A stretch of 64,000 nt of DNA from assembly GCA_977020255.1 (NCBI GenBank), contig CDROCS010000294.1:1-64000 (forward strand). Direction: 5' to 3'. Positions 1-48,251 of the stretch are shown in pieces (the stretch's first letter is position 1; every line of letters starts with the position of its first letter). The notes below the pieces were generated by a model. The model did not search any database. It saw only the letters and a program-made list of their open reading frames with translations, and had not been told where the DNA came from. The DNA comes from Obrimoposthia wandeli (lineage: Eukaryota). The position numbers were made by a program, and so were the translations under genes.

Positions 1-830
1 AAAGATATGCAGCTACACACGCTTATTTTAATAATAAAATTGATTTCTATTATCATAAAGGATTGATGCAAATGGAACAGTTATATCGGATGATGATTGA
101 AAGAGATTGCCAGTTAAACAAAGAGATCGTGAGAACAAAGTTAGCATTAGCTATTACGAATCCAGACATGGCGGTAACCATTATTACCCTTGGATGAAGG
201 AGTGATTTGCTAAAACCATGGAGAAGTATTTGTATACTTACAGAATTAATAGTAGAGGTACAGTTGAGAAAAACAAATCGATGTACAGGTGAATTGGCAG
301 TAACGTATAATTTAAAAGATCTTTTGTTGAACCAATCACGAAATGTTACTTCAAAGACACCCCAACTAAAGAAATCAGCTGCTCTAATATAATGGCACCT
401 GAATATCAGATGACGAATAATCTATGGATAACGTTACCTGATCGGGAAGCCAACGAAAACCCCAGCGACTATTGATAAGAATGACGAATCTTAAGGTAAA
501 TGAAATTCCAAGCGGTGGAAAATATGGAGAACGCAAGTTGTACAATGAAAAAAGATTTAAAAGCGGCGTGGAACGAAATAATGTTTCCAGTAAGAAGAGC
601 CAGAGTACTTTGCGGAGATGGTACATCGAGCATTACCGCCAGGAGCGAGATATGCGAATTTCGATATGTTATTATCGCCAAGTCATTTCAGGAAGCAGCA
701 TGAACACTTAGAAAGATGTGGGGGAAATTCCTTGTCTTAGGACAACTATTTTCGGGTATCATAGGTATTTATGTTATAATTAAATTTGTGCAGGTAATTC
801 TTAGGTGTTGTCTACGTATAGTTTATACAG
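1..830 (+). pseudogene. C-terminal part of chuvirus-like envelope glycoprotein, frameshifted
   Basis: Manual translation across frames gives RSFVEPITKCYFKDTPTKEISCSNIMAPEYQMTNNLWITLP, KDLKAAWNEIMFPVRRARVL and KMWGKFLVLGQLFSGIIGIY. These match element B's FVEPITR...KEINCSNIMAPHY...IWITLP, EDIDKLRKEILFPQIRSRIL and KIWGKFLIFGQAFSGLVGIY. Confidence 0.88.
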
Positions 831-1259
831 GATAACCGGAATCACCTGGCAACTTATAATTGGATGTTTTTCCATTTTAGCAAAATATCTAATGCACCAT
901 CACGAGAACGAGTTGCGAGCCCTCAAAAGAAGGAACAACACCAAACGAGAACCATGATGAGAGAACCAAGAAACTATCGAGACGACAACGACGACGATAA
1001 TGATAGTCCAGAAGATATGCAAAAGATACCAGGAAAACCAAAGATTCCGTTACCAGACAAGGAAAAGTGGCGTTAAACCTATACCCAGCAGAAGGAATTG
1101 AAGGAAGAGAAGGAAAAATTCAAGAGAGGCATCTTAATGATAAGATGGCTAAAGTGAGAAACGCTACAGTGAAATTCCACAAGCAGAGGAAAAAGACAAA
1201 AGATAATTCCAGAAGAATTCTGAAGTCTAGGATATCAAACGAGAATCCCAATGCTCCTA

Positions 1260-1545
1260 CAAGTAGCAGTAACATTGAACGGAAGAGAGAATATCTTGCC
1301 GAAGTTGATACCGGATCTGCAGTATCATAGTACTGAGTAAAGAAATATCTTGTCATCAAAAGAATTAAGAGAGAAGTATGTCCTAGAAAACAGACATTTG
1401 TTAACGTGAACGGTACAGATGTAGTGTCGGAAGGAACGCTGAAATGTTCATTGAATATCGATGGAAGAGTATTACAGTTAAATGCTAGAATATTCACAGA
1501 TTGCGGTAGTCCAGTCATGCCATTGGGATGGACGTAATACGAATG
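1260..1545 (+). pseudogene. Retropepsin-like aspartic protease domain no. 1, frameshifted
   Basis: EYLAEVDTGSAVS (DTG at 1307-1315), followed in another frame by FVNVNGTDVVSEGTLKCSLNIDGRVLQLNARIFTDCGSPVMPLGW (flap and C-terminal strands). Confidence 0.75.
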
Positions 1546-1844
1546 TTTGAAGGAATAATTATACTACCAAACAACAAGAGTTATAAGAATGATGACAGTT
1601 CAGTGAGAGAGAGATAAAAATGTTGAGAGGACCTATAGTCGAAAAGGAAAAATGCACTACGTTCCGTATGGGAAGTTCGTACCCAGACAAAAACAGGAAG
1701 CGCTAGCAAAGTCGATACTTCACTACAAAATGTAAATTTCGGACCACAAGATACGACGAGGAGAAAAATAACATATGTAAATCTGTCAGAAAGGGATCCC
1801 ATGAGATTCGAGAGAGAAGAAAGAGGGCAGAAATATATTAGAAC

Positions 1845-2035
1845 AGTACTATTCAAAAGGAATGGCACGTAAATGGCAAGATCAGGTTTAGAAATGCTAA
1901 ACGCACGACAAGTAGTTATGGTCAGGAGATAGTAGTACGATGCGTATGGTGTAGAGTAAAGTTTAGAGAATGGGAACAGAATGAAAACCCAATGAGACGT
2001 CATAAAGAGATGCACCAAATTGTCCATTTCTTTTG
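1845..2035 (+). pseudogene. BIR (baculovirus IAP repeat) domain, frameshifted
   Basis: MARSGL... then VVRCVWCRVKFREWEQNENPMRRHKE/APNCPFL: exact C-x2-C-x16-H-x6-C spacing after one frameshift. Confidence 0.8.
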
Positions 2036-2224
2036 AAACTGAAAACGTCAAACGTACCAGAAATCAAACGGGAAAAGCACCCGATTTCGATTACAGTGAT
2101 GGGATTCCAAAGGAGAATCAGCTCTAATAACAGGTATTAGAGTAATAACGAATAGTCGAATTGAAGATATATTCGAAGTTATGCGAGAAGTGAACGAATG
2201 TGACGAACAGTATCAGTAATGCTT

Positions 2225-2395
2225 TCGAAGATCCAAGACTTAAAAATTGGCAAAAAGGGACTTTTTATAAAAAGGATAGTAAAGACGTAATTAAATGCCA
2301 CAAGTGTAAAAAGAACGAATTATCGACAGATACACTCTGGAGCTACCTAAGAAAATTTTGTACACATCATGAATTTTTGCGAATTTTGTACTTCT
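2225..2395 (+). pseudogene. Second, degenerate BIR-like domain
   Basis: RLKNWQKGTFYKKDSKDVIKCHKC resembles the BIR motif GFYY-x-G-x2-D-x-V-x-C-x2-C. The His/Cys half cannot be recovered cleanly. Confidence 0.45.
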
Positions 2396-2684
2396 AAAAA
2401 ACAAAATAAAGCAAAAAGAACAGAAAACCGAATGTATAATCGAATACCAAATCACACGAAAAGAGATTTTGGCTCAACAAGACACACCGGTAGTGTCATT
2501 CGTGAGAGGGTTATATATCCAAAAGAAGCAGAAAGAATCAGAGAGAATTGGTAGAATTAAAAATAAAAACTACGCTTGCGAAACGGATACGGATCGATTT
2601 TTGAATACTGCGAGATAAAGATGACAGTACAATTGAAACAAAGAAAAAGAGTACATAAATGAACTAGAATACGTACTAGAAGAT

Positions 2685-2815
2685 CCGGAATGCGCAGTTT
2701 GCATGGTTAACAAAATAGAAGTTGCCTTTCTACCATGCGGACATGTAGAACATGTCGGAGATGTGCGAATGAAATGGTATCATGTCCAATTTGTCGAAGA
2801 ATAATAGATCGACAA
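2685..2815 (+). pseudogene. IAP-type C3HC4 RING finger, one frameshift
   Basis: ECAVCMVNKIEVAFLPCGHV + RTCRRCANEMVSCPICRRII, typical of IAP C-terminal RINGs. Confidence 0.85.
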
Positions 2816-2919
2816 GTGAGAAACATTAGATTTCACTATCCAAATATAGGAAGTGGACTGACAGAGTGTAATAATTCGATAAATACAATATACCATATGG
2901 GAAACATAAATGGGGCACA

Positions 2920-5900
2920 GCGACCAGCAGCTATCATTAGAGTAAATAATTTAAGAGTAAAAGCCTTAATCGATACAGGTGCTGTAGCTTCAATAGTAAG
3001 TGAATACTGTTTGACAGAGGAACAGAAACGAACAATGGCAGAACCAGATGAATTTTGGTATCGGTCAATGGAGACCCTGTAAAAGTGACGGGAATATTAC
3101 CATGTACATTTATAATTGGCCGTACTACGATTACCTTACCAGTTAGAATCATGAAGAATGTCCTGAACCTACAATTTTAGGAATGGATGTATTATCACAA
3201 CTCAAAGGGATAAGTATTGATTTACAAGATCCAAGATTGAAGGATAGCACATCAAACAGACAAATAAACCAAATTGATGTAATTATAGAATCCCTATAAA
3301 AATCGGTATTAAAGATCACAATTTCTCATTCAAGGTCACACATTATCAGAAGATAAAGGACCAGTTGTGTTCGAACCATCACGAGATTTCATAGAGAAAT
3401 ACGAATTACCAGTTGTGAGTACAGTATGCCTGATCGAAAACCATAAAATACCAGTTAGACTGATGAATACAACCAACAATGACATTCTATTATACAGAGG
3501 AATGAGGTTGGGAAAGATAGCACAAATGGAGAATCCCACAGTGTGTGCTATGAAACTCGATAAAGACACGAATGATTACGAAGAAATAGTAATCCAATCA
3601 GAAAGACTGACAACTAGAGAAAAACAATTACTTGACCTAATACATAAATTTCCGAAAGTAATTGCAAAAAATCCATATGACATAGGAGAAACACCTGTCA
3701 TAAAACATACAATACCACTGACAGAAGACAAAGTAGTCAGAAGAAGACCATATCGAGTACCATTACAATTACAAGATGAAGTAAAAAGTCAGATCGAAGA
3801 TATGTCTAAAACAGGAGTAATTAGACCGAGTGTTCGGCAGTGTCAGCAGCTGTGGTGTGGGTAAAAAAGAAGCAGCGGAAAATGGGGTTCTGTATAGATG
3901 TCAGAGAACTGAACAAGATCACAAGAAAGATGTGTATCCACTACCTAGAATCGAAGAGATGCTCGATAAATTGGGTAATTCAGATTATTTTACAACATTA
4001 GATTTGCAGAGTGGATACTGGCAAATCGAGATAGAGAAAGAGGATAAACACAAAACAGCCTTTTCCTGCGGAGATGGATTATACGAATGCGAAAAGATGC
4101 CATTCGGACTGACAGGAGCTCCAGCAACATTTCAGCGTTGCATGAATTTTGTACTCGCATCGTGTGCAAACACGATGGTTTATATCGATGACATAATAAT
4201 ATTTTCGAAAACGTTCGAAGAACATTTAAAAATCTTGAAGTTGTATTTAAAAGACTGGAAAATGCTAAATTAAAAGTTAAACCTACAAAATGCGTATGGG
4301 CTAAAGAGCGAGTAACATTTTTAGGACATATAGTATCGAAAGGGCATTCGACCTGATCCGGCAAAAGATCGAGAAGTAAAAGCGCATTTAGCGCCAAAGA
4401 CTGTTAAGGAGATACAGAGTTTTTAGGTCTGGCGAATTATTATAGACGATTTGTTGAACATTTTTCAGATATAGCAACACCATTGAGAAAGTTGACGAGA
4501 AAAAGATGAGAAGTTCATATGGGGAGAAGAAGCCCAACAAGCGTTCGAGCATTTAAAGAAAGATTGATAAAAGCACCGATATTAGCGTTTCCAGATATAA
4601 ACCGACAATTCATACTCATGACAGATGCAAGTAACTATGCTGTAGGAGCAGTATTGGGACAAGAGGATGACGAAGGAAGAGAACACGTCATTGCGTATGC
4701 GAGTAGAGGATTAAACAGAGCCGAAAGAGGATACTCTGTTATCGAAAAGGAATGTCTAGCCATAGTGTATTCATGTAGAGCAAGTACAGACACTATTTGC
4801 TAGGACAAAAAGTATTCACTGTATACAGATCACAAACCACTACAGTTCTTATATAAACATAGAGATGAGATGAGTAGATTAAACAGATGGTTTCTAAAAT
4901 TGGCCGAATTCGATCTAGAAATCCGTTATAGAACCGGAAAGTCGAACGGCAACGCAGATTGTTTGTCGAGATTGACAAATGTAGACGAAAGAAACATAAT
5001 TCCAGAAGAAGATGAAACCAATGACCAAAAGGAGAAGCAAATCTACTGACGATTTTGCTAAAGACGAGGTAAAAATAGACAAAGAGATCATCAAAGAACA
5101 GAAAGAAGATGAAAGAACTGAGTCTAATCAAAGAATTGTTGGTGAAAGGAGATCTAAACGATGAAATGACGAAGAAATACTCGATAAAAGAAGGAATCTT
5201 GTATATTGTCAATAATGTCGGAAAGATAGTAGTAGTAATTCCGAAGTCATTGAAAACAGCAGTGATGATCCAGTATCACGACGGAACACTAGGAGGACAT
5301 CTGTCAGGGCGAAAGACAATAGCCAGAATCAAAGAAAGTACCATTGGGATGGTATGGAAGACGACATAAAACAATGAATTGTAAACAATGTAAAGTGTGT
5401 TTAACCAGAAAAGACACCGGAACTCGTACTAAAGTTCCGTTGAAACCAATACCAGTTCCCTTGGCACCAATGGAATTCACAGCGATGGATATATTGGGAC
5501 CATTGAGAGAATCAAGTAAAGGAAACAAGTATGTCATAGTATTTACGGATTACATGACGAGATGGGTAGAAGCATATCCCATGCAGAACCAGAAAGCTGA
5601 AACAATAGCGCAAATCTTGGTGGAAGAGATAATATTTCGATACAGGTGCCTAGAAAGTTGTTAACGGATCAAAGGAAAAGAACTTCACTGGAGAAGTCAT
5701 AAAAGCAGTATCGAAGATATTCGGAATTATGAAGTTACAAACTTCACCATATCACCACAGACAGATGGTCTGGTAGAAAGGTTTAATAAAACTTTATGTA
5801 TGATGGTACAATCCTATTGCTCAGACAAGCAAGAGAGGATTGGGATAAATATTTACCTTCATGTTTATATGCTTACAGGAATTCAGTTCGAGGCGACAGG

Positions 5901-6205
5901 TCACACACCATTCTATCTGATGTATCTCAGACAGAACAATATGCCGATGGATCTGGAGTGGACCGAGCCAACATCTCAGTACCTAGAAACTGAACAATAC
6001 ATTGTCGTCATGAAGGAAAGATTACAAGATGCTTGGACCAAAGCCGGATTGAAGTTGAAATTCAATCAAAGAAGGTTACAAGGAACAATACGACAAAAAG
6101 CAAAACCACATGAATTTAGAGTCGGAGATCAAGTGATGATATTTTATCAGTCATCGAACCAGGTCTATCGTTTAAACTTCATAGACCATACAAAGGACCA
6201 TACAA
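2920..6205 (+). pseudogene. pol: Ty3/gypsy pol (protease no. 2, RT, RNase H, integrase), many frameshifts
   Basis: VKALIDTGAVAS; YPLPRIEEMLDKL, TLDLQSGYWQIE, MPFGLTGAPATFQR, YIDDII; LMTDASNYAVGAVL, YSVIEKECLAIV; GGHLSGRKT...CKQCKVC; MDILGPL, FTDYMTRWVEAYP; GPY motif near 6195. Confidence 0.95.
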
Positions 6206-6206
6206 G

Positions 6207-7634
6207 GTGATCCAGACAACTTCAACAAATTTGAAAGTAATCAACGAAGAGAATCGGAACAAGGAACCGATGATTGTACATGCAAATCGATGCAAATTAG
6301 TACCAAATAAAGATAATGCGTCACGATATGAGTTAAGATCACAGAAATCGAAATCGAATACCAATACCATTAAACTTACACGAATGGTAAGTGATCGGAA
6401 CTACATAAACATGATGACGAGTGGTAGCAAGGAAAAACCAGCGAGAATTGGTATGCTCAGAATGAAGTACCAAGAGGAAAAGGAAGTAATCCGACACATC
6501 GCACCACAAGAGATATTAGAAGAAGACGAAGAGATAATAGTCGTTTTCGAAAAAACACAACCAACAGATGTAGCTAAAGAAGTCATTGTGAAAGATGCAC
6601 TGACAAACGAATTTCTGTGCGAACTTAGAGTGTCATATTACGACGGAAATACATTAGTCGCATCACTTTATCAAAATTCCAATGTGTTTACGACTGAGAA
6701 AGTGATAATCGAAATCACATTGACACCAAACATAGTTGCATGGCAGAACTATGACAGTACTGAAGCAGGACTAGCCAGTCAGGAAGAGAAGGAACCGGCC
6801 GGTGGTCACATACTGCATGGTACACCAACAGGACTCAAACAAGAATACCACGATGTAATAATGGTATTACGTAATTCACATGGGAAAAGAGATATCATGA
6901 GAGTCCATTTAATCGACGCTGACACTGAAAAGATAATTTGTCAGATGGACACTAAATACTTTGATGGAAAGACAATTGTATGTTGTATACCAGAATCTCA
7001 CCGGTTAGAGACAGATCAAACGGAAGTATCTGTAAGGTTGAGCGTAATAGAAGGATTCCATTCGCCAACCCATCCGGAAGTGACTAACAATAAAATCATC
7101 AAAGCAACGGCAGAGTTACGCATTGACAGCGGATACCGGAAGTGGGAAGCTAAAAATAAAAAGCCACAAAGAATCAATATGATCCGAGAACAAGTGACCA
7201 ACTCAATCCAGCCAAAATATCATGCTGAAATAGTATCATCCGCGCCAAGTGTAATCACATCGATAAACGACGAAATTATAATTTTACTAAAAAATCGATG
7301 GCCGTCATCAACTGAGATACGAGTAAACTTAATTAATTATGCGAAAACACCGATATCTAAGCTGAATGTTACCTATTTTGATGGATTGTCCATCATGGGT
7401 AAATTGGAAACAATTGTCATGTGCTACGGAGCACAGTTCCAAGTTGAGATACTTAAAGATAGTGTAATACCGTATCCGATTCACAAATACGAAGGGGAAA
7501 TCAATCCAATTATTCTAACACCTTCATTAATTTCAGTCAGACAGACATACCGGAATACCCTTCGAGCGAGTCTAGTGAAGACAGCGAACCGGAAAGTAAC
7601 GATACAGAATCAACAGAATCCGAAGATAACATAA
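6207..7634 (+). CDS. Integrase C-terminus fused to three ~80-aa repeats (TIG/IPT-like Ig fold, inferred)
   Basis: HANRCK...RYELRS integrase tail, then three repeats with conserved I-x4-P, [DE][EV]I[IM][VI][VLF] and Y[YF]DG at near-constant spacing (about 6486-6722, 6807-7049, 7227-7457). An open acidic frame from about 7540 links to the next ORF by one frameshift. Confidence 0.7.
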   Translation: MIQTTSTNLKVINEENRNKEPMIVHANRCKLVPNKDNASRYELRSQKSKSNTNTIKLTRMVSDRNYINMMTSGSKEKPARIGMLRMKYQEEKEVIRHIAPQEILEEDEEIIVVFEKTQPTDVAKEVIVKDALTNEFLCELRVSYYDGNTLVASLYQNSNVFTTEKVIIEITLTPNIVAWQNYDSTEAGLASQEEKEPAGGHILHGTPTGLKQEYHDVIMVLRNSHGKRDIMRVHLIDADTEKIICQMDTKYFDGKTIVCCIPESHRLETDQTEVSVRLSVIEGFHSPTHPEVTNNKIIKATAELRIDSGYRKWEAKNKKPQRINMIREQVTNSIQPKYHAEIVSSAPSVITSINDEIIILLKNRWPSSTEIRVNLINYAKTPISKLNVTYFDGLSIMGKLETIVMCYGAQFQVEILKDSVIPYPIHKYEGEINPIILTPSLISVRQTYRNTLRASLVKTANRKVTIQNQQNPKIT

Positions 7635-7654
7635 TAGAGCGATTCGGAAGAACC

Positions 7655-9637: not shown

Positions 9638-11079
9638 AACCCTTTGCAAAAGGTCAGTCAAGGCCCTGTGCACCGTTGCACAAGGATTGATCTATGGAGT
9701 AGTAATTGGATTGGTACTGCAAGCCATGCCAACCAGTAAAGCCGAATTGATGACACTATCCGAATATAATTTACATTTGAGAAATCTAGACAACACCCTA
9801 GAAATAATCAAGACATCCCACAGTAGAGCCGTGATGATCATGTGTGTAAAAGGATGTCCAGGACAGAATGTGTATAGTCCCAGCGACCGAAATGATAACA
9901 CTTAATGGACATTATGGAGTTAGCGTTGTCACATGTGAAGACTACATATTTGGACAAACTAAAATAGTGCTTCTCAGTGACACGTCCAACCAAAGTGCAC
10001 ACAAATTTAAAATATTAACCATCAAGAGTAAAGGAATACCAGCAGTACGTTATGGTATTCTAGAATTGGTTAATCCAATACTCGCACTGATCATTGGATT
10101 TATAATATTAATATTACTCATCTTGTTTTGTTGTTCAAAGATAGAGTCGAGATCAAAAAAGAAACGCCATGATCTCGCAAGACGAACAGGTCAAATGAAC
10201 TTACAAAAATTCAACACAATAATACCAAGACCACCATTCCTAGATGAACCAGCACCAGAGTACCAGCCAACGATATACGAACACATCGAGGAAAGACCGT
10301 ACTATATGAGTAATTTGACTTGTTTCATTGAAGTTCCTGAGTTTAGGAATCGAACGATCATAGGAATCATGCTGATCGTACAAATCACCACTACCAAGGC
10401 TAGTTATGAGATCATGATCAGTAAATGGAGACAAGACGTAATACGGGCAATATACATAGAAATTCCCCTACTAAAAACAAATCACGTAGTAGACATTCAT
10501 CTACAGACGTCAGCAACTGACAATATCGATCAGAAATTGTATGTCATCCGACAGGTCAGAATAAAAATCGACCAACATACACCCGTTTACAAATTAATAT
10601 TATTGCATCATGAAAGAGTGTTATACCTACGGATAACAATATCAAAGAGGAAGCGGATTATCCAAAGTATCCGAACAAAGTCATTAATATTACCTAGAGA
10701 TGAGCGCATCTGGAAAATTGTCGACAGGATTATGATCACAGGTAGACGACGTAAAGCCGTATGGAATTCCGTTAGGATATTTTTCAGATTGCTAGAAACT
10801 GACAGCGTGACAGTAATGTGTCCCAACCCAGATGGCGTAATCAGATTCGAAATCCAAAGCCAAATGTTAGTACCACATTTTAACACAGAATGTCTGTGTA
10901 ATCGAATTGCAAATAATTCTACAGAGACCGCAACCGTATTCATGATAATAATAGGTGATATATTCTACATAACACTAAGATACCAGAACCGTCGATTTCG
11001 CAGATACGGTATAAGTATCAAACCCAGGAAAATCATTCCCAGAAGACCAATCCTAATAGTCAAAAGAAGGCAAAGGTAA
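9564..11079 (+). CDS. Polyprotein segment(s) with signal-peptide-like and transmembrane segments, product unknown (two frameshifted ORFs)
   Basis: GLIYGVVIGLVLQAMPTSKA; TM PILALIIGFIILILLILFCC followed by a basic stop-transfer stretch; TIIGIMLIVQITTTKA. ORFs 9564-9905 and 9868-11079 overlap. Confidence 0.6.
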
Positions 11080-11662: not shown

Positions 11663-11671
11663 TATATAAAA
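11663..11671 (+). promoter_or_regulatory. TATA-like box upstream of RING ORF1
   Basis: TATATAAAA starts 44 bp upstream of the ATG at 11707 in a short AT-rich intergenic gap. Confidence 0.4.
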
Positions 11672-11706
11672 CTCATGTAGAAATTAATCATCATCATGTA
11701 TTTAGA

Positions 11707-36992: not shown

Positions 36993-37063
36993 TTTCTAAA
37001 TTGTTAAAAAGTTTTTAAGTCTTATTTTAAAAAAAAAAAATAAATAAATAAATCTTTTGATTT

Positions 37064-41300: not shown

Positions 41301-42500
41301 ATTAATAGTTAACGGAAGGTTATGTTTAATTAAATCTGTTCGTCCTAGGTCATATTCATTTTTTGCAAAAATTACGTCATATTTCTCCATCAATGATTTT
41401 AGTTTTGATTTCTCATAATCATTTAATCTAATATTTTCAAATTTTACAGCGGAATTGTCTTCTATTTTTTCATTATTAATTAATTCTATATTCTCTATAA
41501 CACTTATTTTTCCAAGGCGTGTTCCTACTTTTAGATGAATCTCGTTTATGTCTCCATTTAATATTCTGATAGGTATTGTATTATTTTTTATTTTACAAAT
41601 TATATTTGGTAGAACGTAATTTAATGTTTCCTGTTGATATTTATAAGGTTCGAATAAGATGTCTTTTTCTGTAACTATGTTAGTTTCTAATTGTAATATT
41701 GTTTCTGTTCTAGGTTGAAGAATGATATCTCCTTTTATTTCCAATTCGTATTCGCTTTTAGCGTTTGGTCTGTAAATGTCTTTAATTTGATTTTTCTCAA
41801 AGTCGAAGTGAAAATTGTTTCCTAATTTCCTCAATGTATCTATTCCTATTATCATCTGACATGGACAATTTTTCATTATTCTAGTAGGTATTTTTATAAA
41901 TTTATCTCCTATTTTAAAAATGCAATCTAATTTACCAATAATATTTACGGGTTGACCGTTTGCTGCTGTTATTTGACTGTTATCTGTGAGAAGTAGTAAT
42001 ATTTGGTGTGGTTTTAAGAAAGATTCGTCCAAAACTGTTACGCTTGATCCTGTGTCAATTAAAGCTTTTAATTTATACTCATTTATTTCAACTTTTACAT
42101 AAGGTCGTCTATCATTATCCATTTGATTTATAGTATATATTGTTGGTGCAGTTAATTTTTGAACTATTATTTCTTCTTTATATCTTTCTAAATCGGGGTA
42201 TTGTGCAGATTCTGTATTCTCTTTATTTTTATTGTCTACTATTTTTTGTAAATTTGTTTCTCGCATTTCGTTTGATAATGCGTTTACAGTATTTTGATGA
42301 TGATTAAATATAAGAAATTTTGCCAAAAATGGAAAACATCCTAATATTAGTTTCCATGTTAATCCTCCAACTTTATAAATATAGTATGTGGATAAAATTT
42401 GACTCAATAGTATTTTAAAGCATATTAGTAGTGCATATATTCCTACAAGTCCAGAAAATGCTTGTCCAAATATTAAAAATTTTCCCCATATTTTTGACAT
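37995..42500 (-). CDS. pol: Glycoprotein TM tail + protease + RT + RNase H + integrase + signal-peptide/FN3-like extension (1501-aa open segment)
   Basis: KALIDTGSS, YPLPRIDEIL, LDLQSGYWQI, YIDD, MTDASGYALG, GGHLS...CEIC, DVMGPL/DKGPEF/YHPQTDGLVERFN, GPY. Hydrophobic N-terminus belongs to G. Confidence 0.97.
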   Translation of the reverse strand: MSKIWGKFLIFGQAFSGLVGIYALLICFKILLSQILSTYYIYKVGGLTWKLILGCFPFLAKFLIFNHHQNTVNALSNEMRETNLQKIVDNKNKENTESAQYPDLERYKEEIIVQKLTAPTIYTINQMDNDRRPYVKVEINEYKLKALIDTGSSVTVLDESFLKPHQILLLLTDNSQITAANGQPVNIIGKLDCIFKIGDKFIKIPTRIMKNCPCQMIIGIDTLRKLGNNFHFDFEKNQIKDIYRPNAKSEYELEIKGDIILQPRTETILQLETNIVTEKDILFEPYKYQQETLNYVLPNIICKIKNNTIPIRILNGDINEIHLKVGTRLGKISVIENIELINNEKIEDNSAVKFENIRLNDYEKSKLKSLMEKYDVIFAKNEYDLGRTDLIKHNLPLTINTAIKQRPYRIPYAYREEAQRQVKGMLENKIIRRSFSAWTSPVVLIKKKDGSLRFCVDYRKLNEITHKDTYPLPRIDEILDKLKNAKIFTTLDLQSGYWQIEIDESDKEKTAFSTGEGLYEFNVLPFGLTDAPATFQRCMSHILMDADHVMVYIDDILIFSKNFEEHLKDLENVFLRLKIAGLKLKPKKCEWMKDKVNYLGHAVSAKGIQPDESNIEKIKNFPIPKTVKNIQEFLGLAGYYRRFIRNFAQIATPLNKLIKKDEEFEWETEQQESYEYLKQKLIEKPILRYPNFNNSFLVMTDASGYALGAVLGQQDNNEKDHVIAYASRSLKKHEINYSTIERECLAICFAMEHFKHYLLGRKVHVYTDQRPLQWLLNHKDTTSRLMRWALILQKYDIEIKYRKGKSNANADCLSRIREEVNVINSNDTELNIFTIIKARYDDKVITDLQSKDTELQQIIKYITINQVPTDEKLRKHLKIHEYRYKFSNNILHYLNDKNLYSLVIPKEIQCQLLLQYHNGALGGHLSTKKTHSRLNLKYYWEDMKEDVKNWCNTCEICLKRKNTLRTTKIPLKPIPYPSAPMETVAMDVMGPLPETPRGNRYIIVFSDYFTKWPEAFPTHDHKAETIAKVLVEKIIFTFGAPRKLLTDKGPEFINNVLASIAEIFHIKKINTTPYHPQTDGLVERFNRTLEDMMASYTNNNQTDWDLHIPPCLFAHRTSVHASTGETPFYLMFLRDPQMPIDLTLLQPTTQYLEIPEYKIEIRERIKLAFEKAKLFVKNIQENYKEYYDRRTKTSNIKIGSKIMIHNPQINVGLSHKLSKPYKGPYTVISTNGTNITAKLDNELKSKEIRTHINRCRQVPEENTTVKSHKYNLRSNTKNTVLQMLPIQDIQRKNIKNKKSKWNKAIVISIKEFSKILIIFAIYLSISKNVQGANATKLNDKKLTIKNVINKHDSTTHLIKNFGLITIIPEITSIKLKISLFINKTGNIQITQKDRKQNITIIGIKSRKYTIPFLRDETQYEIKIKSNTQNITLYQRTIETHIYLASILETTAKYISKHKIMIKWEFQLKIDDLDKALIRIRYRGHNNNRNKITKIYNTILKR

Positions 42501-42509
42501 TGTATTTTT

Positions 42510-44110
42510 TGTAGCTTTTATGTAATGGTTTGGAGAAAGTAATAAATCATAATCAGGACGGCTAATTCCGTCTGGTACTGATCTTTCTATGATTTGTGTT
42601 AAAATTCGTGATCTTATTTGAGGAAATAAAATTTCTTTTCTTAATTTATCTATATCTTCTTGTATGTAAATGCCTTTTGTATTTAGTTCATTGTCTGGAT
42701 TTATTTCTATGTCATTTTTAGATTTGTTAATTGTAGTTTTAGTGGTTGAGTAACTATGTCTCTTCTTGGTAATGTTATCCAGATATCTTTTGAAATTTTA
42801 TAATGAGGTGCCATTATGTTTGAACAGTTTATTTCTTTTATGCTGAATGTGTTAAAAAGTATTATTCTGGTGATTGGTTCTACAAATAATGAATGATTTT
42901 TATATGAAATTGGTAATTCTTTAGTGCATTTATTGTGATTTCTTATATTAACTATTACTTTTTGGCATTGATACGTATATAGTACCTCTCCCATTACTCT
43001 TCCGAAAGTACCATCTGGTAACGGTAATAATGGTGTTATTAATTCTGTATTTGTAGCAATAATTGCTAGTTTTGTTTTCAAAATTTCTTGATTTAATTTA
43101 CAGTCATTCATTATTGTTTCTCTATAAATAGCTTCTATTGTCATTAATCCTTTGTGATAAAAATAATCTAATTTATTATTGAAATAATCGTAATTTTTTA
43201 TATCAAATTTTGTTGGTGTAGTTTTTGCATTATAAATTTTTTCTTTACTTAGATATATTCCTTTATAATTAGTTGTATAAATAGAGTGTCCACATCGGGA
43301 TTCCTCTTTCTTTTTAATAAATCGCATACCTGAACCTTGTTCAGTTGACATTAAAATAGTTGGAGTTGATGTTTTTTGTATTTTTTCTAGTTCTATATTT
43401 TTTAAGTATATTTTTTGGAATTCGTTGATCTAGCTCTGGATCATCTTTGAATCTTTGACCTTGAATTATTTGGAAATTTTCTGATTTTAGTAGTATTAAT
43501 TTACATTGGTCTGTTTTTACCTTATAGTATAAAATTGAGGATCCTGTGTTACAATATCCGATATTTGCTGCACAAAAAGGCATAGTCACCATGGTATTTG
43601 TAGATGGATCAAATGTTGCTTTAAATGTTCTTAGTTCTACCTCAAAGTTTTTTATAACTACTAAACCATTTTCTTTAACTCCCATTACGACGTATGATCC
43701 TGTTGTGCATTCTCCGTCAGATTTGATAGTTCCTACCACTGTAATCATTTGTTGTATTATTTTGTTTTTTATTGCTTTTACTTTTATTTCTCTATCTATT
43801 CTCAGTTCGCCTGTTGCAAAAGCATCTTTACAATTTAACGCGTCAACAATTATTGGTGTTTTTCCTAATGCTGGCTTAACAATTGAATTATGGCTGTGTT
43901 GTCCGCAATATGTTATGAATGTTTCCACATGTACTCTACTTTCGAAAACTTCTGTATTTATGTAATCTGTTTCCTGGTATACATGAAATAACTTGGTGGT
44001 TTTAACTTTTACTTCATTTGGATCTGCGTCGGCGCATTGTTGTAAATCCATTAGTGAATATTTATTTTGTATACTATATTTTGAACAATCATATGCTTCA
44101 AGAGCATTTA
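42510..44110 (-). CDS. Chuvirus-like envelope glycoprotein ectodomain (spans ORFs 43341-45323, 42707-43351 and the pol frame)
   Basis: Signal IIQIIFMICIITNIIKPINA, then LEAYDC...YSLMDLQQC...TYCGQHSHNS...GEC; GEVLYTYQC...KCTKELPISY...FVEPITRI...C...P-x-Y...W; TM region. This matches my recollection of chuvirus G and its endogenous copies. Confidence 0.8.
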
Positions 44111-45323
44111 TTGGTTTTATTATATTTGTAATTATACATATCATAAATATTATTTGAATTATTTTCCATAAATTCTGGATGATTTTGTTAAAATTATATG
44201 TATTTTTAAGATTTGAATTTTTACTATTTTTTGGTGATTTTCGTTTATTTTTATTTTTCGATTTTTTATTTTGTGTTTGAGTGGTTTGATTTATTTTTGT
44301 ACTTATTTGTGTTCTTTTTTCTAATGTTAGACAACCGTTTCTAAATATTTCTCCGAATTCGGATTGAGAGTTGGTACTATTTGTGTTTTGCTCATTGTTT
44401 TGGTATTGCTGATGTGTTTCTTTATAGCGATTATCTATTTCTTGTTGTCTTAATCTCATCAATGCAACCTCCTCTGTTTCCTGATTTATATCAGTGTTTT
44501 CAATAGTATGATTGTCTTTTTTACAAAATCTACAAAATTTGTTGTTGGTTATTTTATAACAATTCTCTATTGTGTGATTTTGCAGTCCACAATTTGTACA
44601 TTTTTGGAAAGGTCTTTGTGTAATTTGTGAATCTGTATAGTTTCTGTTTGTTTGATTCCTATAAAAGTTATTTGTCGGTGCTGTATATTGTTGCTGGTTT
44701 TGGTAATTAGATTGTGTATTTGAGTTATAGTTTTGAGTTTGATTGAAATTTGGTGGTGTTGTAGGTCTTTGTATTTTTTCAAAGGTTAATGCTGAAACTT
44801 CAGATTGTTGTAACATGTTTAATCTTGTTTCTACAAGTTGAGCCTTATTTACAGCTTGCTGAAAGTTTTCTACTTCTAGTAGAGCTGGATGATTTTTGAT
44901 TTTATTATTTAATCCATGTAGAAACTGATGTAATAGTAAGCGCTCTCTTAAAACTTCCTCAATTCCAGGGAATGATTTTAGGGCTAAACGTCTTAATTCA
45001 ATTGCAAAAATATTTGTGGGTTCTCCTAAATGTTGCTCACGTTGTCTAAACTGATTTAAGTAATTTTGCTCTGATTGGGTTCCTAAAATCATATTTTGAA
45101 AATTTTGAACTAAATGGTCCCATGTGTCTTTTTGTTCATTGTTTAATCCTCTATAAATTGTTAAGGCAGTGCCTTTTAAATACGCTGGAAAAACCCTAAG
45201 TTTCTCTTCATTAGTCCATTCAAATGCTTGAGCAAATGAATCAAATCTATTTAAAAATTCGGGTAATGAGGATTTATCGCCATTGAAAGCGTCTAAAGGA
45301 ACATTTAATTTATGTTCAGCCAT
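43341..45323 (-). CDS. gag: Gag (capsid + CCHC knuckle) fused in frame to the N-terminal half of G
   Basis: FNGDKSSLPEFLNRFD...AYLKGTAL...FLHGL (retrotransposon gag); CTNCGLQNHTIENC zinc knuckle and a partial second one. Confidence 0.92.
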   Translation of the reverse strand: MAEHKLNVPLDAFNGDKSSLPEFLNRFDSFAQAFEWTNEEKLRVFPAYLKGTALTIYRGLNNEQKDTWDHLVQNFQNMILGTQSEQNYLNQFRQREQHLGEPTNIFAIELRRLALKSFPGIEEVLRERLLLHQFLHGLNNKIKNHPALLEVENFQQAVNKAQLVETRLNMLQQSEVSALTFEKIQRPTTPPNFNQTQNYNSNTQSNYQNQQQYTAPTNNFYRNQTNRNYTDSQITQRPFQKCTNCGLQNHTIENCYKITNNKFCRFCKKDNHTIENTDINQETEEVALMRLRQQEIDNRYKETHQQYQNNEQNTNSTNSQSEFGEIFRNGCLTLEKRTQISTKINQTTQTQNKKSKNKNKRKSPKNSKNSNLKNTYNFNKIIQNLWKIIQIIFMICIITNIIKPINALEAYDCSKYSIQNKYSLMDLQQCADADPNEVKVKTTKLFHVYQETDYINTEVFESRVHVETFITYCGQHSHNSIVKPALGKTPIIVDALNCKDAFATGELRIDREIKVKAIKNKIIQQMITVVGTIKSDGECTTGSYVVMGVKENGLVVIKNFEVELRTFKATFDPSTNTMVTMPFCAANIGYCNTGSSILYYKVKTDQCKLILLKSENFQIIQGQRFKDDPELDQRIPKNILKKYRTRKNTKNINSNYFNVN

Positions 45324-47024
45324 TATTTGAGGTTGATCGATTATTTGTTCGTTGTTTATCTGTACAATAGGTGGTTCTGGGACGGCTACTGCTTCCGTTA
45401 TTTCTGACGAACTATCCGAGTCAGATGTTTGTGGTGAAGGTAAACTCTCTGTATCTGAGGTTAAAGCTAGGTCCAGATGTTCTGAGAGTGGGGAAGTCTG
45501 TGTAAGTAAATCGTTATTTGTTGTAAAACTGATTTGTGATTTGGGTCTTTGAATTGTTTTTTCACTGGAGTCTGTTCTAACTAATCTTGTTTGAATTCTT
45601 CTCCAGTGAAGGTTAACTACGTTTTTGTTTACTTATTTTGTGTGTCTGTTTTTGTGATAGATCTTTGGGTTTGTGTTATTAATAATTTATTTAAAGTTTC
45701 AAAATCAAATATTGCACAAATGAAAAATGCGTACTGCGTACTGAAACTAAAAATATTTCGGAGGAATTCGTAAAAGTTATTTAGTTAATCTCAAAATCAA
45801 ACTCTCTTATCAATATTAAAAACACGCTCTCTGAAAATCTCTGGAGAAAATTTATCTTTCCGAAGTTTTATTTTATTTTGTTTTTTAATTTTTTTTTAGA
45901 ACAATAACAAGACTCAAAAATTTATCTCAACAATCTCTGTCCCTTATCACTTTGAGCACTACCACCGCCAACCAGTATATAGTCTTTATATGATAGCACT
46001 CGACGTAACTTGGGAAACAAGACAATTTGCGACAAAATTTTAAATTTTTTGATCAATTTTATTTTTATACAAAAATATATTTATATGATTATTTTAACTT
46101 TTATTATCTTTTTAGTTATTTATTTTACTTTTACGCCTCTAATAGATAAATCCACTCCAATTTATAGTTCTCAAAAAACGAATTTCCTACTGGTTAACCG
46201 GTTCAAAGGAAAATGTTAAAAAATTTTCAAAATTTTCTATAACTCTTATTACTAACTACAAGTCAATTAATTGTTTGTTATACTTTACCAATGAAGATAG
46301 GAACAAAAATATTTATATACACGCAGCACAATAGGATTATTTATTGATACTTTTCAAAGTTAAATTTGAAAAATGGACTACAATATATACGATTTTAACA
46401 ATTCTGAATTAGTTATGACTTTTAATGATGTCAACTTTTTAATGTAACAACTCTATGGTTCCAAATCAGTTTACCAAAGAATAAAAATGAATGTAAAATA
46501 GTAAGTCCAACTTCGAGAGATAATATAAATGGTATAAGTAGTTGAATCAAAAATCAAATACAATTGTAAAGCCGTAAAATTGTTTTTAAATAAAAATTAT
46601 GATATATGAACTTTTAAACAGTAATTATTTTCAGAAATGTTTAGGTCAAGGTATTCCTACAGTCTCTCACAATTCTAAACAATACTCGTGAGACTATAAG
46701 AATCCCTAATTTTCAAAAATAATATTTATACGATTATGACATTCTATCTATCGCTATTAGAAATAAACATAATTTTAAATACAATAATCAATTTTTAACA
46801 CAAATTATATACACTTATATAAATGGAAATTAACTGAATATTTTATTCCCAGAAAAGAAACTGCAAAAATAAATATGTTAACAAATAAACCCAAAATATG
46901 AGTTTTAAAATTACTTCAAAGAATTTTAAAAATCGAACTCAAAGTTCTTCAGGGCAAGTTATCATAAATGAACACTACAAATCACTAAAGCCACAAAAAA
47001 CACCTAAATAGTCTCTATTATTTT

Positions 47025-47300
47025 AAGATTAATGTAAAATCCGACCCAATAATATTAATATATTAAAATGTAACACAAAAACCAAAAATACAATAAAATC
47101 AAAATAATAAACTATTCTAAGATTAATGTAAAATCCGACCCAATAATATTAATATATTAAAATGTAACACAAAAACCAAAAATACAATAAAATCAAAATA
47201 ATAAACTATTTCAAGATTAATGTAAAATCCGACCCAATAATATTAATATATTAAAATGTAACACAAAAACCAAAAATACAATAAAATCAAAATAATAAAC
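47025..47300. repeat. 94-bp tandem repeat x3 in the leader of element B
   Basis: AAGATTAATGTAAAATCCGACCC recurs at 47025, 47119 and 47213. Confidence 0.92.
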
Positions 47301-47329
47301 GACCTGCAGTCCAATTTCCGTATTGTGCT

Positions 47330-47346
47330 CTAAGTCGAGCTCACCA
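47330..47346 (-). promoter_or_regulatory. Primer-binding site, tRNA-Trp-like (tentative)
   Basis: TGGTGAGCTCGACTTAG starts 1 nt inside the 5' LTR boundary; resembles the canonical Trp PBS TGGTGACCCCGACGTG with 4 mismatches. Confidence 0.7.
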
Positions 47347-47347
47347 A

Positions 47348-48251
47348 TGTTATATTTTGTTAATTTCCAATATATTCAGTTTTTCCAAAAATAATCCGCA
47401 ACTAATTTCTTGTATAATTGAATAGTTTTCTATAAATCTGAACGAATCTGAACAATTTGTTTTTGAAAATATATTTGACGGTATATAAATGGATAAAATT
47501 TTTCAGTGATAATAATCAAAATGGGATATATTTTTAAGAAAAATGAAATTGAATTATGGCAATACAAATCTGTCAGAGTGATAATTTTTAATAGCCAATA
47601 GAGATAAAATTTTTCCGTGTGTCCATTATAATGACGACGATTGCTATAAATAGCAATCGTCCAAATGTCAACTGGGCAAGGCTGATTCGCATAATGTCAG
47701 AGCAGAAAGAAACGAAATCCATGCGAGATCGACGATTGCTATAAATAGCAATCGTCTAAACACAGTTTTCGGTATTTTTTTAATCTTGGGGTTTCAATCA
47801 ATGGGTCCATGCAATCTTGTCATTAAGGGAATTTAGTTGCCATCAGGAGGGACTGCGAGTCGGCAGAGTGCGACCGATGGAGCACTGGAGGGAGCCAAGC
47901 GCACACAAACTCCCGGCACGCACGCACACACACATAGGATGATGCCGGCCGACCGGGACGACGTACACAGAACTGCGGACTGCGGAACCGGCCGAGAAAG
48001 GGCAAACCGCCGCCGCATCTGCTGCAAAGCTGGGCGAAAACCCCTGGCGGCCAAAACCACCCTTTATTTTCATCACTAAAAAAAAACAGCCGCCCTCCCG
48101 ATGAGCCTGGCAAGGCGAAACGGGCTAACAACCCGTCGGAGGCTGAGATTTGATAAACCTCCCTAATTGTGGGCACTTTAGATAATTTTAAAGAATGTCA
48201 ATTTAAATTGACTGTAATTTATTTTAATTAATTTTAATTAAAGACCCAACA
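47348..48251 (-). repeat. 5' LTR of element B
   Basis: Direct repeat of 33955-34858, adjacent to the PBS. Confidence 0.97.

What the first reader, a model, noticed from the sequence alone, without database searches (positions are those of the whole stretch)
1..48251. Family of giant, envelope-bearing Ty3/gypsy elements with swappable host-manipulation cargo
Seen: two distinct elements share a G-PR-RT-RH-INT backbone, the same integrase tail (HANRCK/HINRCR, RYELRS/KYNLRS), a post-integrase cargo slot and 3' accessory ORFs, but the cargo is completely different. Known: IAPs, DSP phosphatases and RING ligases are classic baculovirus host-control genes. From memory, giant cargo-bearing 'Burro' gypsy elements were reported in Schmidtea mediterranea (Grohme et al. 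2018), so novelty must be tested against them. Inference: this is an endogenous-retrovirus-like lineage with large-DNA-virus-style accessory genes at fixed slots.
Basis: partly seen in the sequence, partly recalled or inferred. Interest (0 to 1): 0.92.

Follow-up and report, generated by a model that had tools for sequence, protein, structure and literature searches.

The report
Burro-like enveloped retroelements with accessory genes
The window holds two insertions of a known kind of large flatworm-type retrovirus-like element that has an envelope gene between gag and pol. They carry different extra genes, and a few features (a conserved exonuclease gene, a phosphatase/RING gene block that stays open in a dead copy) appear not to have been described.

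Summary
Element B (33955-48251, minus strand) is a complete, young 14.3-kb Ty3/gypsy element. It has 904-bp LTRs with 4 mismatches, TG..CA ends and a TTAT target duplication. Element A (1-15620, plus strand) is cut off by the window start. Both have a Monjiviricetes-type class III fusion glycoprotein (G) between gag and protease, then PR-RT-RH-IN and a post-integrase extension. A's RT piece and B group together with intact relatives that show Burro hallmarks.

The cargo differs. A has an IAP-like remnant between G and PR, a tandem active/inactive dual-specificity phosphatase, a membrane protein and three paralogous RING-H2 ORFs. B has an ISG20/SDN1-like DEDDh exonuclease.

Corrections:
- G is broken in both copies.
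- A's backbone is dead (about 20 disabling changes), yet its six cargo ORFs are open.
- B's exonuclease ORF is not idiosyncratic cargo; homologous sequence follows pol in four of five fetched relatives.
- The cargo looks cellular in type, not derived from large DNA viruses.

The architecture and the "apoptosis/ubiquitin tinkerer" idea are already published for Burro and for flatworm GAG-ENV-POL elements. I rate this a new variant of a known kind, of moderate interest.

The parts
1..15620 (+). Element A: LTR retroelement cut at its 5' side by the window start. Contains G remnant, IAP-like remnant, broken PR-RT-RH-IN, six open cargo ORFs and the 3' LTR.
18..939 (+). A: remnant of the class III glycoprotein G (middle and C-terminal parts only). 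Broken: 2 frameshifts and 6 stops.
   Evidence: tblastn with B's G pieces and the intact G of L001/L002
1842..2801 (+). A: IAP-like remnant in the ~2-kb G-PR slot (940-2905). BIR fragment within 1842-2033, partial IAP-type RING within 2637-2801. Broken several times; not countable without an intact relative.
   Evidence: Pfam BIR E 3.6e-6, zf-C3HC4_3 E 4.5e-6
2906..6341 (+). A: pol, broken by about 6 frameshifts and 6 stops. Domain bounds: PR 2906-3159, RT 3849-4503, RH 4540-4926, IN 5232-5826, IN tail to 6341.
6207..7634 (+). A: open 475-aa ORF. First ~45 residues are the integrase tail, followed by a ~430-aa post-integrase extension of unknown fold.
7655..9637 (+). A: open 660-aa ORF. An active-looking DUSP domain (HCxxGxxRS present), a second DSP domain lacking the catalytic Cys and Arg, and a C-terminal part with a hydrophobic helix.
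   Evidence: Pfam DSPc 1.9e-41, two stretches; DUSP10 and other MKPs in PDB; sequence
9868..11079 (+). A: open 403-aa ORF. Predicted single-pass membrane protein (strong hydrophobic helix at residues 71-89); no family hit.
11707..12006 (+). A: RING-H2 ORF 1 (99 aa).
   Evidence: Pfam zf-RING_2 5.4e-10; paralogy
12067..12369 (+). A: RING-H2 ORF 2 (100 aa, GC3 0.75).
   Evidence: Pfam zf-RING_2 1.2e-8
12704..13240 (+). A: RING-H2 ORF 3 (178 aa, GC3 0.67).
13522..15620 (+). A: proposed 3' LTR (2099 bp, TG..CA). Contains a 20-bp x 30 tandem array (14012-14604) and ~30-bp palindromic repeats (14700-15100).
   Evidence: Junction motif shared with B; colinear matches to LTR-like units elsewhere in the window
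33955..48251 (-). Element B: complete LTR retroelement, 14297 bp, flanked by the 4-bp target duplication TTAT (33951-33954 and 48252-48255).
47348..48251 (-). B: 5' LTR (904 bp). A PBS-like TGG... site follows at 47334-47346, and a 94-bp x 3 tandem repeat lies in the 2-kb leader (47019-47300).
33955..34858 (-). B: 3' LTR (904 bp; 4 mismatches and no indel against the 5' LTR).
44202..45323 (-). B: gag part of ORF1. Weak Retrotrans_gag hit, one complete CCHC knuckle, then a Q/N-rich and basic linker.
   Evidence: homology to ORF1 N-termini of L001, L004, L006
42126..44201 (-). B: class III fusion glycoprotein G, running from a hydrophobic leader to a membrane anchor. Broken: 2 frameshifts, no stops. 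It lies across three ORFs.
   Evidence: PF24664 pieces 1.8e-27, 2.3e-30, 2.1e-11; counts
37064..42125 (-). B: pol with post-integrase extension. PR 41817-42113 (DTG), RT 40695-41168 (YIDD), RH 40116-40505, IN 39219-39791 (HHCC), tail to 38676, then a ~450-aa extension. PR to IN is open. The extension is interrupted once by an insertion (a short tandem duplication), so the 266-aa ORF is most likely its detached end.
36684..36992 (-). B: 102-aa ORF with no similarity to anything searched.
35130..36305 (-). B: accessory ORF (391 codons from a TTG; first ATG about 48 codons in). Its C-terminal half is an ISG20/SDN1-type DEDDh 3'-5' exonuclease with all five catalytic residues.

Best explanation
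The window carries two independent insertions of one lineage of envelope-gene-bearing Ty3/gypsy (Metaviridae-like) LTR retroelements, of the GAG-ENV-POL type known from flatworms and related to the planarian Burro elements.

Shown:
- The gene order is gag(CCHC) - class III fusion glycoprotein G (Pfam Monjiviricetes_fusion), with its own hydrophobic leader and membrane anchor - PR - RT - RNase H - IN - a variable post-integrase extension - 3' accessory ORFs - LTR.
- B is a young, complete copy with an open PR-to-IN frame but a broken G.
- A is an old copy whose replication genes are dead.
- Cargo sits at domain junctions of the polyprotein and after pol.

Inferred mechanism:
- In intact relatives the element is translated as one or two giant polyproteins.
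- G is threaded into the ER membrane in the middle of the polyprotein and is released by signal peptidase and/or the element's protease. It then arms virus-like particles for cell-to-cell transfer.
- The accessory proteins act on the host cell. The IAP-like module would block apoptosis. The MKP-type phosphatase with its pseudo-phosphatase partner would dampen JNK/p38-type stress signalling. The RING-H2 ligases would mark host factors for degradation.
- The lineage-conserved DEDDh exonuclease would act on RNA or single-stranded DNA 3' ends. It could trim host small RNAs that silence the element, or it could process or correct replication intermediates.
- The cargo genes look like old captures of cellular genes, not genes of large DNA viruses.
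For: Element B anatomy:
- LTR pair, TG..CA ends, TTAT target duplication, PBS-like site.

Domains:
- Pfam domains in both elements.
- B's domains map colinearly on A.

Relationship:
- A's RT and RH pieces have the same best hits as B.
- In an NJ tree on 141 RT columns, the smallest clade holding A's piece and B has 9 of 115 taxa: P0001-4, P0007, P0009 and P0011 join them. The identical clade recurs in 60 of 100 bootstraps.

Relatives:
- L001, L002, L004 and L006 have G intact and in frame with gag and PR, and L005 has G open in its own ORF (PF24664 E 1e-87 to 5e-94).
- They also show ankyrin, several PR copies, a weak Bcl-2 hit just before G, and a weak SUMO-like hit.

Exonuclease:
- Exonuclease-homologous sequence follows pol in B, L001 (two copies), L002, L004 and L006.
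- The family profile hits ISG20L2 at 1.4e-23, SDN1 at 1.3e-20 and ISG20 at 1e-17.
- D-E-D-H-D is kept in B, L006 and one L001 copy.

Phosphatase:
- Closest to DUSP10 and other MKPs.
- The best library hits with both domains are cellular genes.

Composition:
- A's cargo ORFs up to 11 kb have the same A-rich composition as A's backbone.

Literature:
- PMC6431247, PMC13524379.
Against: - No function was tested; every mechanistic step is inference from homology.
- The host organism is not identified. The only indication is composition (about 70% A+T), which fits a planarian.
- No Burro sequence could be compared, so 'Burro-related' rests on shared hallmarks in relatives that are only about 50% identical in pol.
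- Bootstrap support for the clade is moderate.
- G is broken in both window copies, so neither copy is envelope-competent as it stands.
- A's 3' LTR is inferred without its 5' partner.
- The post-integrase extensions, the 403-aa ORF and the 102-aa ORF have no detectable relatives. A single-sequence structure prediction of the 475-aa ORF failed (pLDDT 32).
Confidence: 0.75

Rival explanations
1. Element A is a mosaic. An old, decayed 5' half (G to IN) was joined by recombination or gene conversion within the integrase tail to the 3' half of a much younger relative. This alone would explain why the cargo ORFs are open.
For: - The backbone has about 20 disabling changes in about 4.1 kb, while the six cargo ORFs (about 5.7 kb) have none.
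- The change of state falls in a stretch that is homologous among relatives, which is a plausible crossover site.
Against: - Base composition is the same on both sides.
- There is no second copy in the window to show a donor.
- The three RING paralogues are old (30-37% identical, no nucleotide similarity), which says nothing about the age of this copy.
Confidence: 0.35
2. The cargo block of A is kept open by selection after the copy's replication genes died. Either the host has co-opted it, or the copy is a non-autonomous element propagated by relatives whose spread depends on its cargo.
For: - The same contrast as above. Under equal decay about 28 disabling changes would be expected in the cargo ORFs, giving P(0) of about 1e-12 by my arithmetic.
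- Catalytic and zinc-binding motifs are intact.
Against: - No expression or population data are available.
- One copy cannot give dN/dS.
- The four gaps between ORFs could themselves be breaks of a former single polyprotein.
- The mosaic explanation is simpler.
Confidence: 0.25
3. One reading: the accessory genes (IAP, DSP phosphatase, RING) were taken from large DNA viruses such as baculoviruses.
For: BIR/RING IAPs and phosphatases do occur in baculoviruses (general knowledge). BIR and RING hits are present in the window.
Against: - The nearest solved and library relatives of the phosphatase are cellular MKP-type and tandem-DSPc genes.
- The exonuclease is closest to cellular ISG20/SDN1.
- No viral protein came back as a named hit for any cargo ORF.
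Confidence: 0.05
4. The 3' ORFs of A are ordinary host genes that merely lie next to a truncated element.
For: They have no relatives in the five related elements. RING2 and RING3 have an unusual GC3 of 0.67-0.75.
Against: - The first ORF starts inside the integrase tail.
- All the ORFs are intronless and on the element's strand.
- They lie upstream of a TG..CA LTR-like terminal unit whose junction motif matches B's.
- The ORFs up to 11 kb share the backbone's A-rich composition.
Confidence: 0.05

Closest known systems
Burro / GYPSM1 giant gypsy-like LTR retrotransposons of Schmidtea mediterranea and other Dugesiidae (Jurka 2007; Grohme et al. 2018; Arkhipova and Yushenova 2019, PMC6431247)
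   Same: - Gag with CCHC knuckles.
- Env with mononegavirus-type glycoprotein homology lying between gag and pol.
- Extra modules inside the polyprotein (BIR, RING, BCL2, SUMO-like, ankyrin) and accessory ORFs that can also occur as polyprotein subdomains.
- Tandem repeats near the ends, and an A+T-rich host.
- Relatives of A and B fetched here show Bcl-2-like sequence just before G, ankyrin and a SUMO-like hit.
   Different: - B is 14.3 kb, not over 30 kb, and has almost empty gag-G and G-PR slots.
- No dUTPase was found between PR and RT in either element.
- The phosphatase, the three RING-H2 ORFs, the membrane protein and the DEDDh exonuclease are not among the Burro modules listed in PMC6431247.
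- No direct sequence comparison with Burro was possible.
GAG-ENV-POL 'ancient errantiviruses' of Platyhelminthes, Nematoda and Bryozoa (Chary and Hayashi 2026, PMC13524379)
   Same: Ty3/gypsy pol with a class III fusogen placed between gag and pol.
   Different: That survey selected intact gag/env/pol and does not discuss further accessory genes. The window's copies have a broken env and carry cargo.
Juno and Vesta LTR retrotransposons of bdelloid rotifers with an exonuclease ORF3 (Rodriguez et al. 2017, PMC5408684)
   Same: An ORF directly downstream of pol encodes a DEDD-superfamily 3'-5' exonuclease with conserved catalytic residues and no known role.
   Different: The rotifer ORF3 is DEDDy (RNase D-like). 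Here it is DEDDh (ISG20/REXO/SDN-like). The host group differs, and those elements mostly lack a true env.
Complex retroviruses and foamy-like fish endogenous retroviruses with accessory ORFs after pol/env
   Same: A retroelement backbone plus host-directed accessory genes near the 3' LTR (mentioned in PMC6431247).
   Different: They belong to a different family (Retroviridae), have env after pol, and carry different accessory genes.

Membership tests
Ty3/gypsy (Metaviridae-type) LTR retroelement | Domain order PR-RT-RNase H-IN, with IN after RT | tested here: met
   Pfam order in B's 1501-aa ORF; same order in A by tblastn
Ty3/gypsy (Metaviridae-type) LTR retroelement | Direct LTRs with TG..CA ends, short target duplication, PBS next to the 5' LTR | tested here: met
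   B: 904-bp LTRs, TTAT duplication, TGG... site. A: only a 3' LTR can be proposed.
Ty3/gypsy (Metaviridae-type) LTR retroelement | Catalytic motifs of PR (D-T/S-G), RT (YxDD) and IN (HHCC) | tested here: met
   B has DTG, YIDD and HHCC. A's genes are broken.
Envelope-bearing GAG-ENV-POL errantivirus-like elements | A viral-type fusion glycoprotein gene between gag and pol | tested here: met
   PF24664 hits in three consecutive ORFs of B and at the start of A. Intact and in frame in relatives.
Envelope-bearing GAG-ENV-POL errantivirus-like elements | An intact env reading frame (the criterion used in PMC13524379) | tested here: not met
   B's G has 2 frameshifts. A's G remnant has 2 frameshifts and 6 stops and is cut by the window.
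Burro family | Sequence identity to Burro1-4 / GYPSM1 | not testable with these tools
   No Burro sequence is available through the tools.
Burro family | Total length over 30 kb with a giant single polyprotein | tested here: not met
   B is 14.3 kb. A's full length is unknown because the window cuts it.
Burro family | Apoptosis/ubiquitin modules (BIR, RING, BCL2, MATH-TRAF, SUMO-like, ankyrin) inside the element | tested here: inconclusive
   A has a BIR fragment, a partial RING and three RING-H2 ORFs. B has none. Relatives have ankyrin, weak Bcl-2 and weak SUMO-like hits.
Burro family | dUTPase between PR and RT | tested here: not met
   No PF00692 hit in B's pol. A is colinear with B over this stretch.
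Burro family | Host is a dugesiid planarian | not testable with these tools
   No host gene or RNA gene was recognised in the window. The window's own proteins are not on record.
Cys-based dual-specificity phosphatase (DSPc, MKP-like) | DSPc fold hit and the HCx5R(S/T) active-site loop | tested here: met
   DSPc 1.9e-41; DUSP10 4.7e-24; loop present in domain 1, Cys and Arg absent in domain 2
DEDDh 3'-5' exonuclease (ISG20/REXO/SDN group) | RNase_T-type fold hit and the five residues D, E, D, H, D | tested here: met
   RNase_T 3.6e-10; profile hits to ISG20L2, SDN1 and ISG20; residues present in B
IAP (inhibitor of apoptosis) | At least one complete BIR domain, usually with a C-terminal RING | tested here: not met
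   Only the C-terminal half of one BIR and the first half of an IAP-type RING are detectable, in broken frames. It is a remnant.

The most novel reading that the evidence does not exclude
Two linked readings are not excluded.

(1) The ISG20/SDN1-type exonuclease gene directly after pol is a lineage-defining accessory gene of these envelope-bearing flatworm-type retroelements. It would serve either to destroy silencing small RNAs or to correct or trim replication intermediates. The second role would parallel the exonuclease that accompanies very large RNA virus genomes.

(2) The phosphatase/membrane-protein/triple-RING block of A is maintained by selection in a copy whose replication genes are dead. 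That would make it a provirus cargo block on its way to becoming host genes.
Probability: 0.2. Interest if true: 0.75.

Novelty: new variant of a known kind. Interest (0 to 1): 0.5.

Why it matters
Planarian-type genomes are packed with these elements, and PIWI control of them is tied to stem-cell differentiation (PMC8532177). Three points could be useful.
- A catalogue of what the elements carry shows which host pathways a retroelement finds worth manipulating. The candidates here are apoptosis, MAP-kinase stress signalling, ubiquitination and RNA 3'-end decay.
- An exonuclease-homologous ORF after pol in most fetched members gives a concrete candidate for an element-encoded counter-defence or fidelity factor.
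- The dead-backbone/open-cargo contrast in A is a testable case of possible gene domestication.

None of this changes the known picture of Burro-like elements. It adds members and modules.

Tried and rejected
Searches that found nothing:
- Word-index protein searches with B's gag-G ORF and with the exonuclease ORF.
- Exact look-ups of B's pol and A's phosphatase ORF, so the source genome is not identified.
- Rfam and tRNA scans of the window.
- Pfam on ten ORFs outside the elements.
- PDB sequence searches with A's 475-, 403- and 224-aa ORFs and with a relative's intact G.
- Two metagenome scans, with the phosphatase and with the exonuclease.
- A search for B's PBS motif in the relatives.

Other dead ends:
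- The single-sequence AlphaFold model of the 475-aa ORF was unusable (pLDDT 32). No fold search was run on it.
- The paper by Grohme et al. 2018 is not held in the library.

Rejected readings:
- The 224-aa ORF as a gene. It overlaps two RING ORFs in another frame, in a G+C-rich stretch.
- An exonuclease in A. The family profile finds only B's copy in the six-frame pieces of the window.

Steps left out because the rules bar them or I could not tell:
- Joining the three G pieces or A's pol pieces into one sequence.
- Fetching Burro, mononegavirus G, or baculovirus IAP/phosphatase comparators.

Relatives L001, L002 and L004-L006 were fetched by look-up from proteins returned by a search with B's own pol. 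I judged them to be endogenous relatives of the element rather than a virus of animals. If that judgement is not shared, searches are the ones concerned.

- Searches printed coordinates of stop-free stretches of A, to make references for the family searches. These implicitly bound stops.
- In my reasoning I located one break of B's pol extension relative to a tandem duplication.

Full report
**1. What is in the window**

Composition and ORF maps show two A-rich coding blocks on opposite strands, at roughly 1-15,000 (plus) and 35,000-46,000 (minus), in a background of about 30% G+C. The window has no N runs.

**2. Element B**

- A self-comparison finds one long direct repeat pair, 99.56% identical.
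- Reading the four junctions places the LTRs at 47348-48251 and 33955-34858. Each is 904 bp; they differ by 4 mismatches and no indel.
- The LTRs have TG..CA ends and a 4-bp target duplication TTAT on both sides. A TGG-initiated PBS-like site lies one base inside the 5' LTR.
- B is therefore a complete, recent insertion of 14,297 bp on the minus strand.
- A 2-kb leader with a 94-bp x 3 tandem repeat precedes ORF1.
- Pfam gives the following for three consecutive ORFs:
  - A weak Retrotrans_gag hit and one complete CCHC knuckle.
  - The Pfam family Monjiviricetes_fusion (PF24664), split over all three ORFs (profile positions 4-225, 263-461, 537-635).
  - PR, RT, RNase H and integrase in one open 1501-codon frame, with DTG, YIDD and HHCC present.
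- A hydrophobic stretch directly precedes the G domain, and a membrane anchor follows it.
- Measured against the intact G of two relatives, B's G has two frameshifts and no stop.
- After the integrase tail the frame continues for about 450 codons without any family hit. It is interrupted once by an insertion, a short tandem duplication. The following 266-aa ORF repeats 28 residues of the pol end and is most likely the detached end of pol.
- A 102-aa ORF follows, then a 391-codon ORF with an RNase_T domain.

**3. Element A**

- B's domains map colinearly on the plus strand from base 18 onward: G middle and C-terminal parts (18-939), PR (from 2906), RT, RH, IN, and the tail up to 6341.
- The window start cuts the element, so gag and the first part of G are missing.
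- Between G and PR, A has about 2 kb that B lacks. Pfam on the open pieces finds the C-terminal half of a BIR domain and the first half of an IAP-type RING. This is a decayed IAP-like module.
- The backbone is dead:
  - G remnant: 2 frameshifts and 6 stops.
  - PR to IN: about 6 frameshifts and 6 stops.
  - The longest open stretch in 1-6206 is 183 codons.
- From 6207 the picture changes. There are open ORFs of 475 aa (integrase tail plus a ~430-aa extension), 660 aa and 403 aa, and three small ORFs of 99, 100 and 178 aa.
- The 660-aa ORF has two DSPc stretches.
  - The first carries the HCxxGxxRS loop. The second lacks the catalytic Cys and Arg.
  - The closest solved structures are DUSP10 and other MAP-kinase phosphatases.
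  - In a search of 1.84 billion representatives, the best hits that match both domains are about 34% identical. Two were looked up and are cellular genes; one is an intron-containing gene in a eukaryotic assembly.
- The 403-aa ORF has one strong transmembrane helix and no relatives.
- The three small ORFs are RING-H2 paralogues. They are 30-37% identical to each other, show no nucleotide similarity, and all have complete zinc ligands. The 224-aa ORF listed by the ORF finder overlaps two of them in another frame and is probably spurious.
- The 3' LTR is proposed at 13522-15620, on three grounds:
  - It starts TGTT and ends AACA, like B's LTR.
  - It is preceded by a C-rich/AGG motif very like the one before B's 3' LTR.
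  - Two of its parts match, colinearly and in reverse, two LTR-like units elsewhere in the window.
- It contains a 20-bp x 30 array.

**4. Are A and B one lineage?**

- A and B share 65% nucleotide identity over RT and 44-55% protein identity over RT, RH and IN.
- A search with B's PR-to-IN region returned thousands of gypsy pols. The best, at 50-55% identity, are unnamed proteins from one ENA assembly (ERZ25039515) and a few metagenomes. Several carry PF24664 or ankyrin in the same protein.
- A's single-frame RT and RH pieces have the same best hits as B.
- In an NJ tree on 141 RT columns, the smallest clade holding A's piece and B has 9 of 115 taxa. The identical clade recurs in 60 of 100 bootstraps.
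Support is moderate.

**5. Relatives and the 'slot' idea**

Five contigs holding the best hits were read and scanned.

- In L001, L002, L004 and L006, G is intact and in frame with gag and PR inside ORFs of 1615-2713 aa. In L005, G is open in a separate 748-aa ORF. PF24664 E-values are 1e-87 to 5e-94.
- Segment lengths vary widely: gag-to-G is 115 aa in B and up to about 880 aa in relatives. G-to-PR is about 30 aa in B, about 650 aa in A, and 18-370 aa in relatives. The post-IN extension is 300-1300 aa.
- Fillings include ankyrin repeats, extra PR copies, a weak Bcl-2 hit immediately before G (L005) and a weak SUMO-like hit (L001). These are hallmarks listed for Burro.
- Some modules are shared between relatives. 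One ankyrin module is 55% identical between two elements but sits after IN in one and before the pol ORF in the other.
- The polyprotein thus tolerates insertions at domain junctions and modules move.
- A's and B's own fillings match nothing in the relatives except gag, G, pol, the integrase tail and the exonuclease.

**6. The exonuclease is conserved, not swapped**

- B's exonuclease ORF has homologues directly after pol in L001 (two copies), L002 and L006, and in L004, where it is split over small ORFs. L005's contig ends inside an ORF that matches the small L004 ORFs lying just before and overlapping that stretch.
- A profile of five members hits ISG20L2 (1.4e-23), SDN1 (1.3e-20), ISG20 (1e-17) and PAN2.
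- The five catalytic residues are kept in B, L006 and one L001 copy. They are lost in the other L001 copy and in L002.
- A has no such gene.
- In B this ORF and the LTR are richer in G+C than the rest of the element (GC3 0.38 against 0.20). This hints at recombination among relatives.
- A DEDD-type exonuclease ORF after pol has a precedent in rotifer LTR retrotransposons, but that one is of the DEDDy type.

**7. The contrast inside A**

- There are about 20 disabling changes in about 4.1 kb of alignable backbone, and none in about 5.7 kb of cargo ORFs.
- At equal rates about 28 would be expected. By my arithmetic, the chance of none is about 1e-12.
- Even if the gaps between the cargo ORFs are counted as breaks of a former single polyprotein, the difference stands.
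- Either A is a mosaic of an old 5' half and a young 3' half, or the cargo block is under selection. One copy cannot decide between these.

**8. How it most likely works**

- Shown: gene order, domain identities, which frames are intact and which are broken, and conservation of the exonuclease.
- Inferred: translation as giant polyproteins; insertion of G into the ER membrane mid-polyprotein and its release by signal peptidase and/or the element's protease; envelope-mediated cell-to-cell spread, as proposed for errantiviruses and Burro; and host manipulation by the cargo (apoptosis block, damping of MAP-kinase stress signalling, ubiquitin targeting).
- The exonuclease's role is open. Trimming of silencing small RNAs fits the SDN1 likeness and the importance of PIWI control of these elements in planarians. 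Processing or correction of replication intermediates is the alternative.

**9. Comparison with what is known, and novelty**

- PMC6431247 already reports for Burro/GYPSM1:
  - Gag with CCHC knuckles.
  - Env in frame between gag and pol, with hits to mononegavirus glycoproteins.
  - BIR, RING (AIR1), BCL2, MATH-TRAF, SUMO-like, ankyrin and dUTPase modules.
  - Accessory ORFs that can also be polyprotein subdomains.
  - The suggestion that the element meddles with apoptosis and ubiquitination.
- PMC13524379 reports the GAG-ENV-POL order in Platyhelminthes, Nematoda and Bryozoa.
- The central idea of the finding is therefore known.
- Not found in the literature I could search:
  - A DEDDh ISG20-type exonuclease as an accessory gene shared within such a lineage.
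  - A tandem active/inactive DUSP.
  - A triple RING-H2 block.
  - The open-cargo/dead-backbone contrast.
- The Grohme et al. paper and its supplements could not be read, so this claim of novelty is provisional.
- Membership in Burro proper cannot be claimed. Size and the dUTPase feature are not met, and no sequence comparison was possible.

**10. Limits and steps left out**

- The host is unidentified.
Broken genes were searched piece by piece.
- No viral comparator and no Burro sequence was fetched or typed.
- The slips named under 'tried and rejected' are declared there.

**Verdict**

This is a real pair of Burro-like, envelope-gene-bearing retroelements with distinct accessory genes. It is a new variant of a known kind, of moderate interest.

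Noticed in passing
window 32225-33871 and 50972-52339: Two direct repeats of 1.4-1.6 kb, 75-78% identical, flank element B. They are related in reverse orientation to A's proposed 3' LTR (A 13555-13626 and 15477-15622). They look like old solo LTRs, or the LTR pair of a gutted third A-like element next to which B inserted.
   Followed up: partly
window 48268-48529 and 54778-55001: Tandem arrays of 43-bp and 41-bp units. The first starts 13 bases outside B's target duplication. L001 has a 41-nt array downstream of its accessory ORFs (22359-22778). Whether these are related was not tested.
   Followed up: no
window 35130-36305 and 33955-34858: B's exonuclease ORF and LTR have G+C of 0.38-0.39 (GC3 0.38), against 0.24-0.30 (GC3 0.16-0.20) for gag, G and pol. 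This suggests that the 3' end of B came from a G+C-richer relative.
   Followed up: partly
window 12067-13240: RING-H2 ORFs 2 and 3 have GC3 of 0.75 and 0.67, in an element with GC3 of about 0.37 and a genome of about 30% G+C. The 12800-13099 stretch reaches 60% G+C. This is unexplained.
   Followed up: no
L001 17041-20113: The relative L001 carries two exonuclease-like ORFs in tandem. One has all five catalytic residues and one has lost them all, an active/inactive pair like A's phosphatase domains.
   Followed up: partly
L002 16285-19000 (minus strand): A second, unrelated gypsy-type pol (RVT_1, DUF7047, rve) lies just downstream of the L002 element on the other strand.
   Followed up: no
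protein P0007: A 2627-aa G-PR-RT-RH-IN polyprotein, 49% identical to B's pol, is deposited as a hypothetical protein of a Flavobacteriaceae metagenome bin. It is almost certainly animal retroelement DNA mis-binned as bacterial.
   Followed up: no
window 14700-15100: About ten copies of a ~30-bp unit with an internal palindrome (CATTG..CCCTAG..CAATT type) lie inside A's proposed LTR, after the 20-bp array. They could be protein-binding sites.
   Followed up: no
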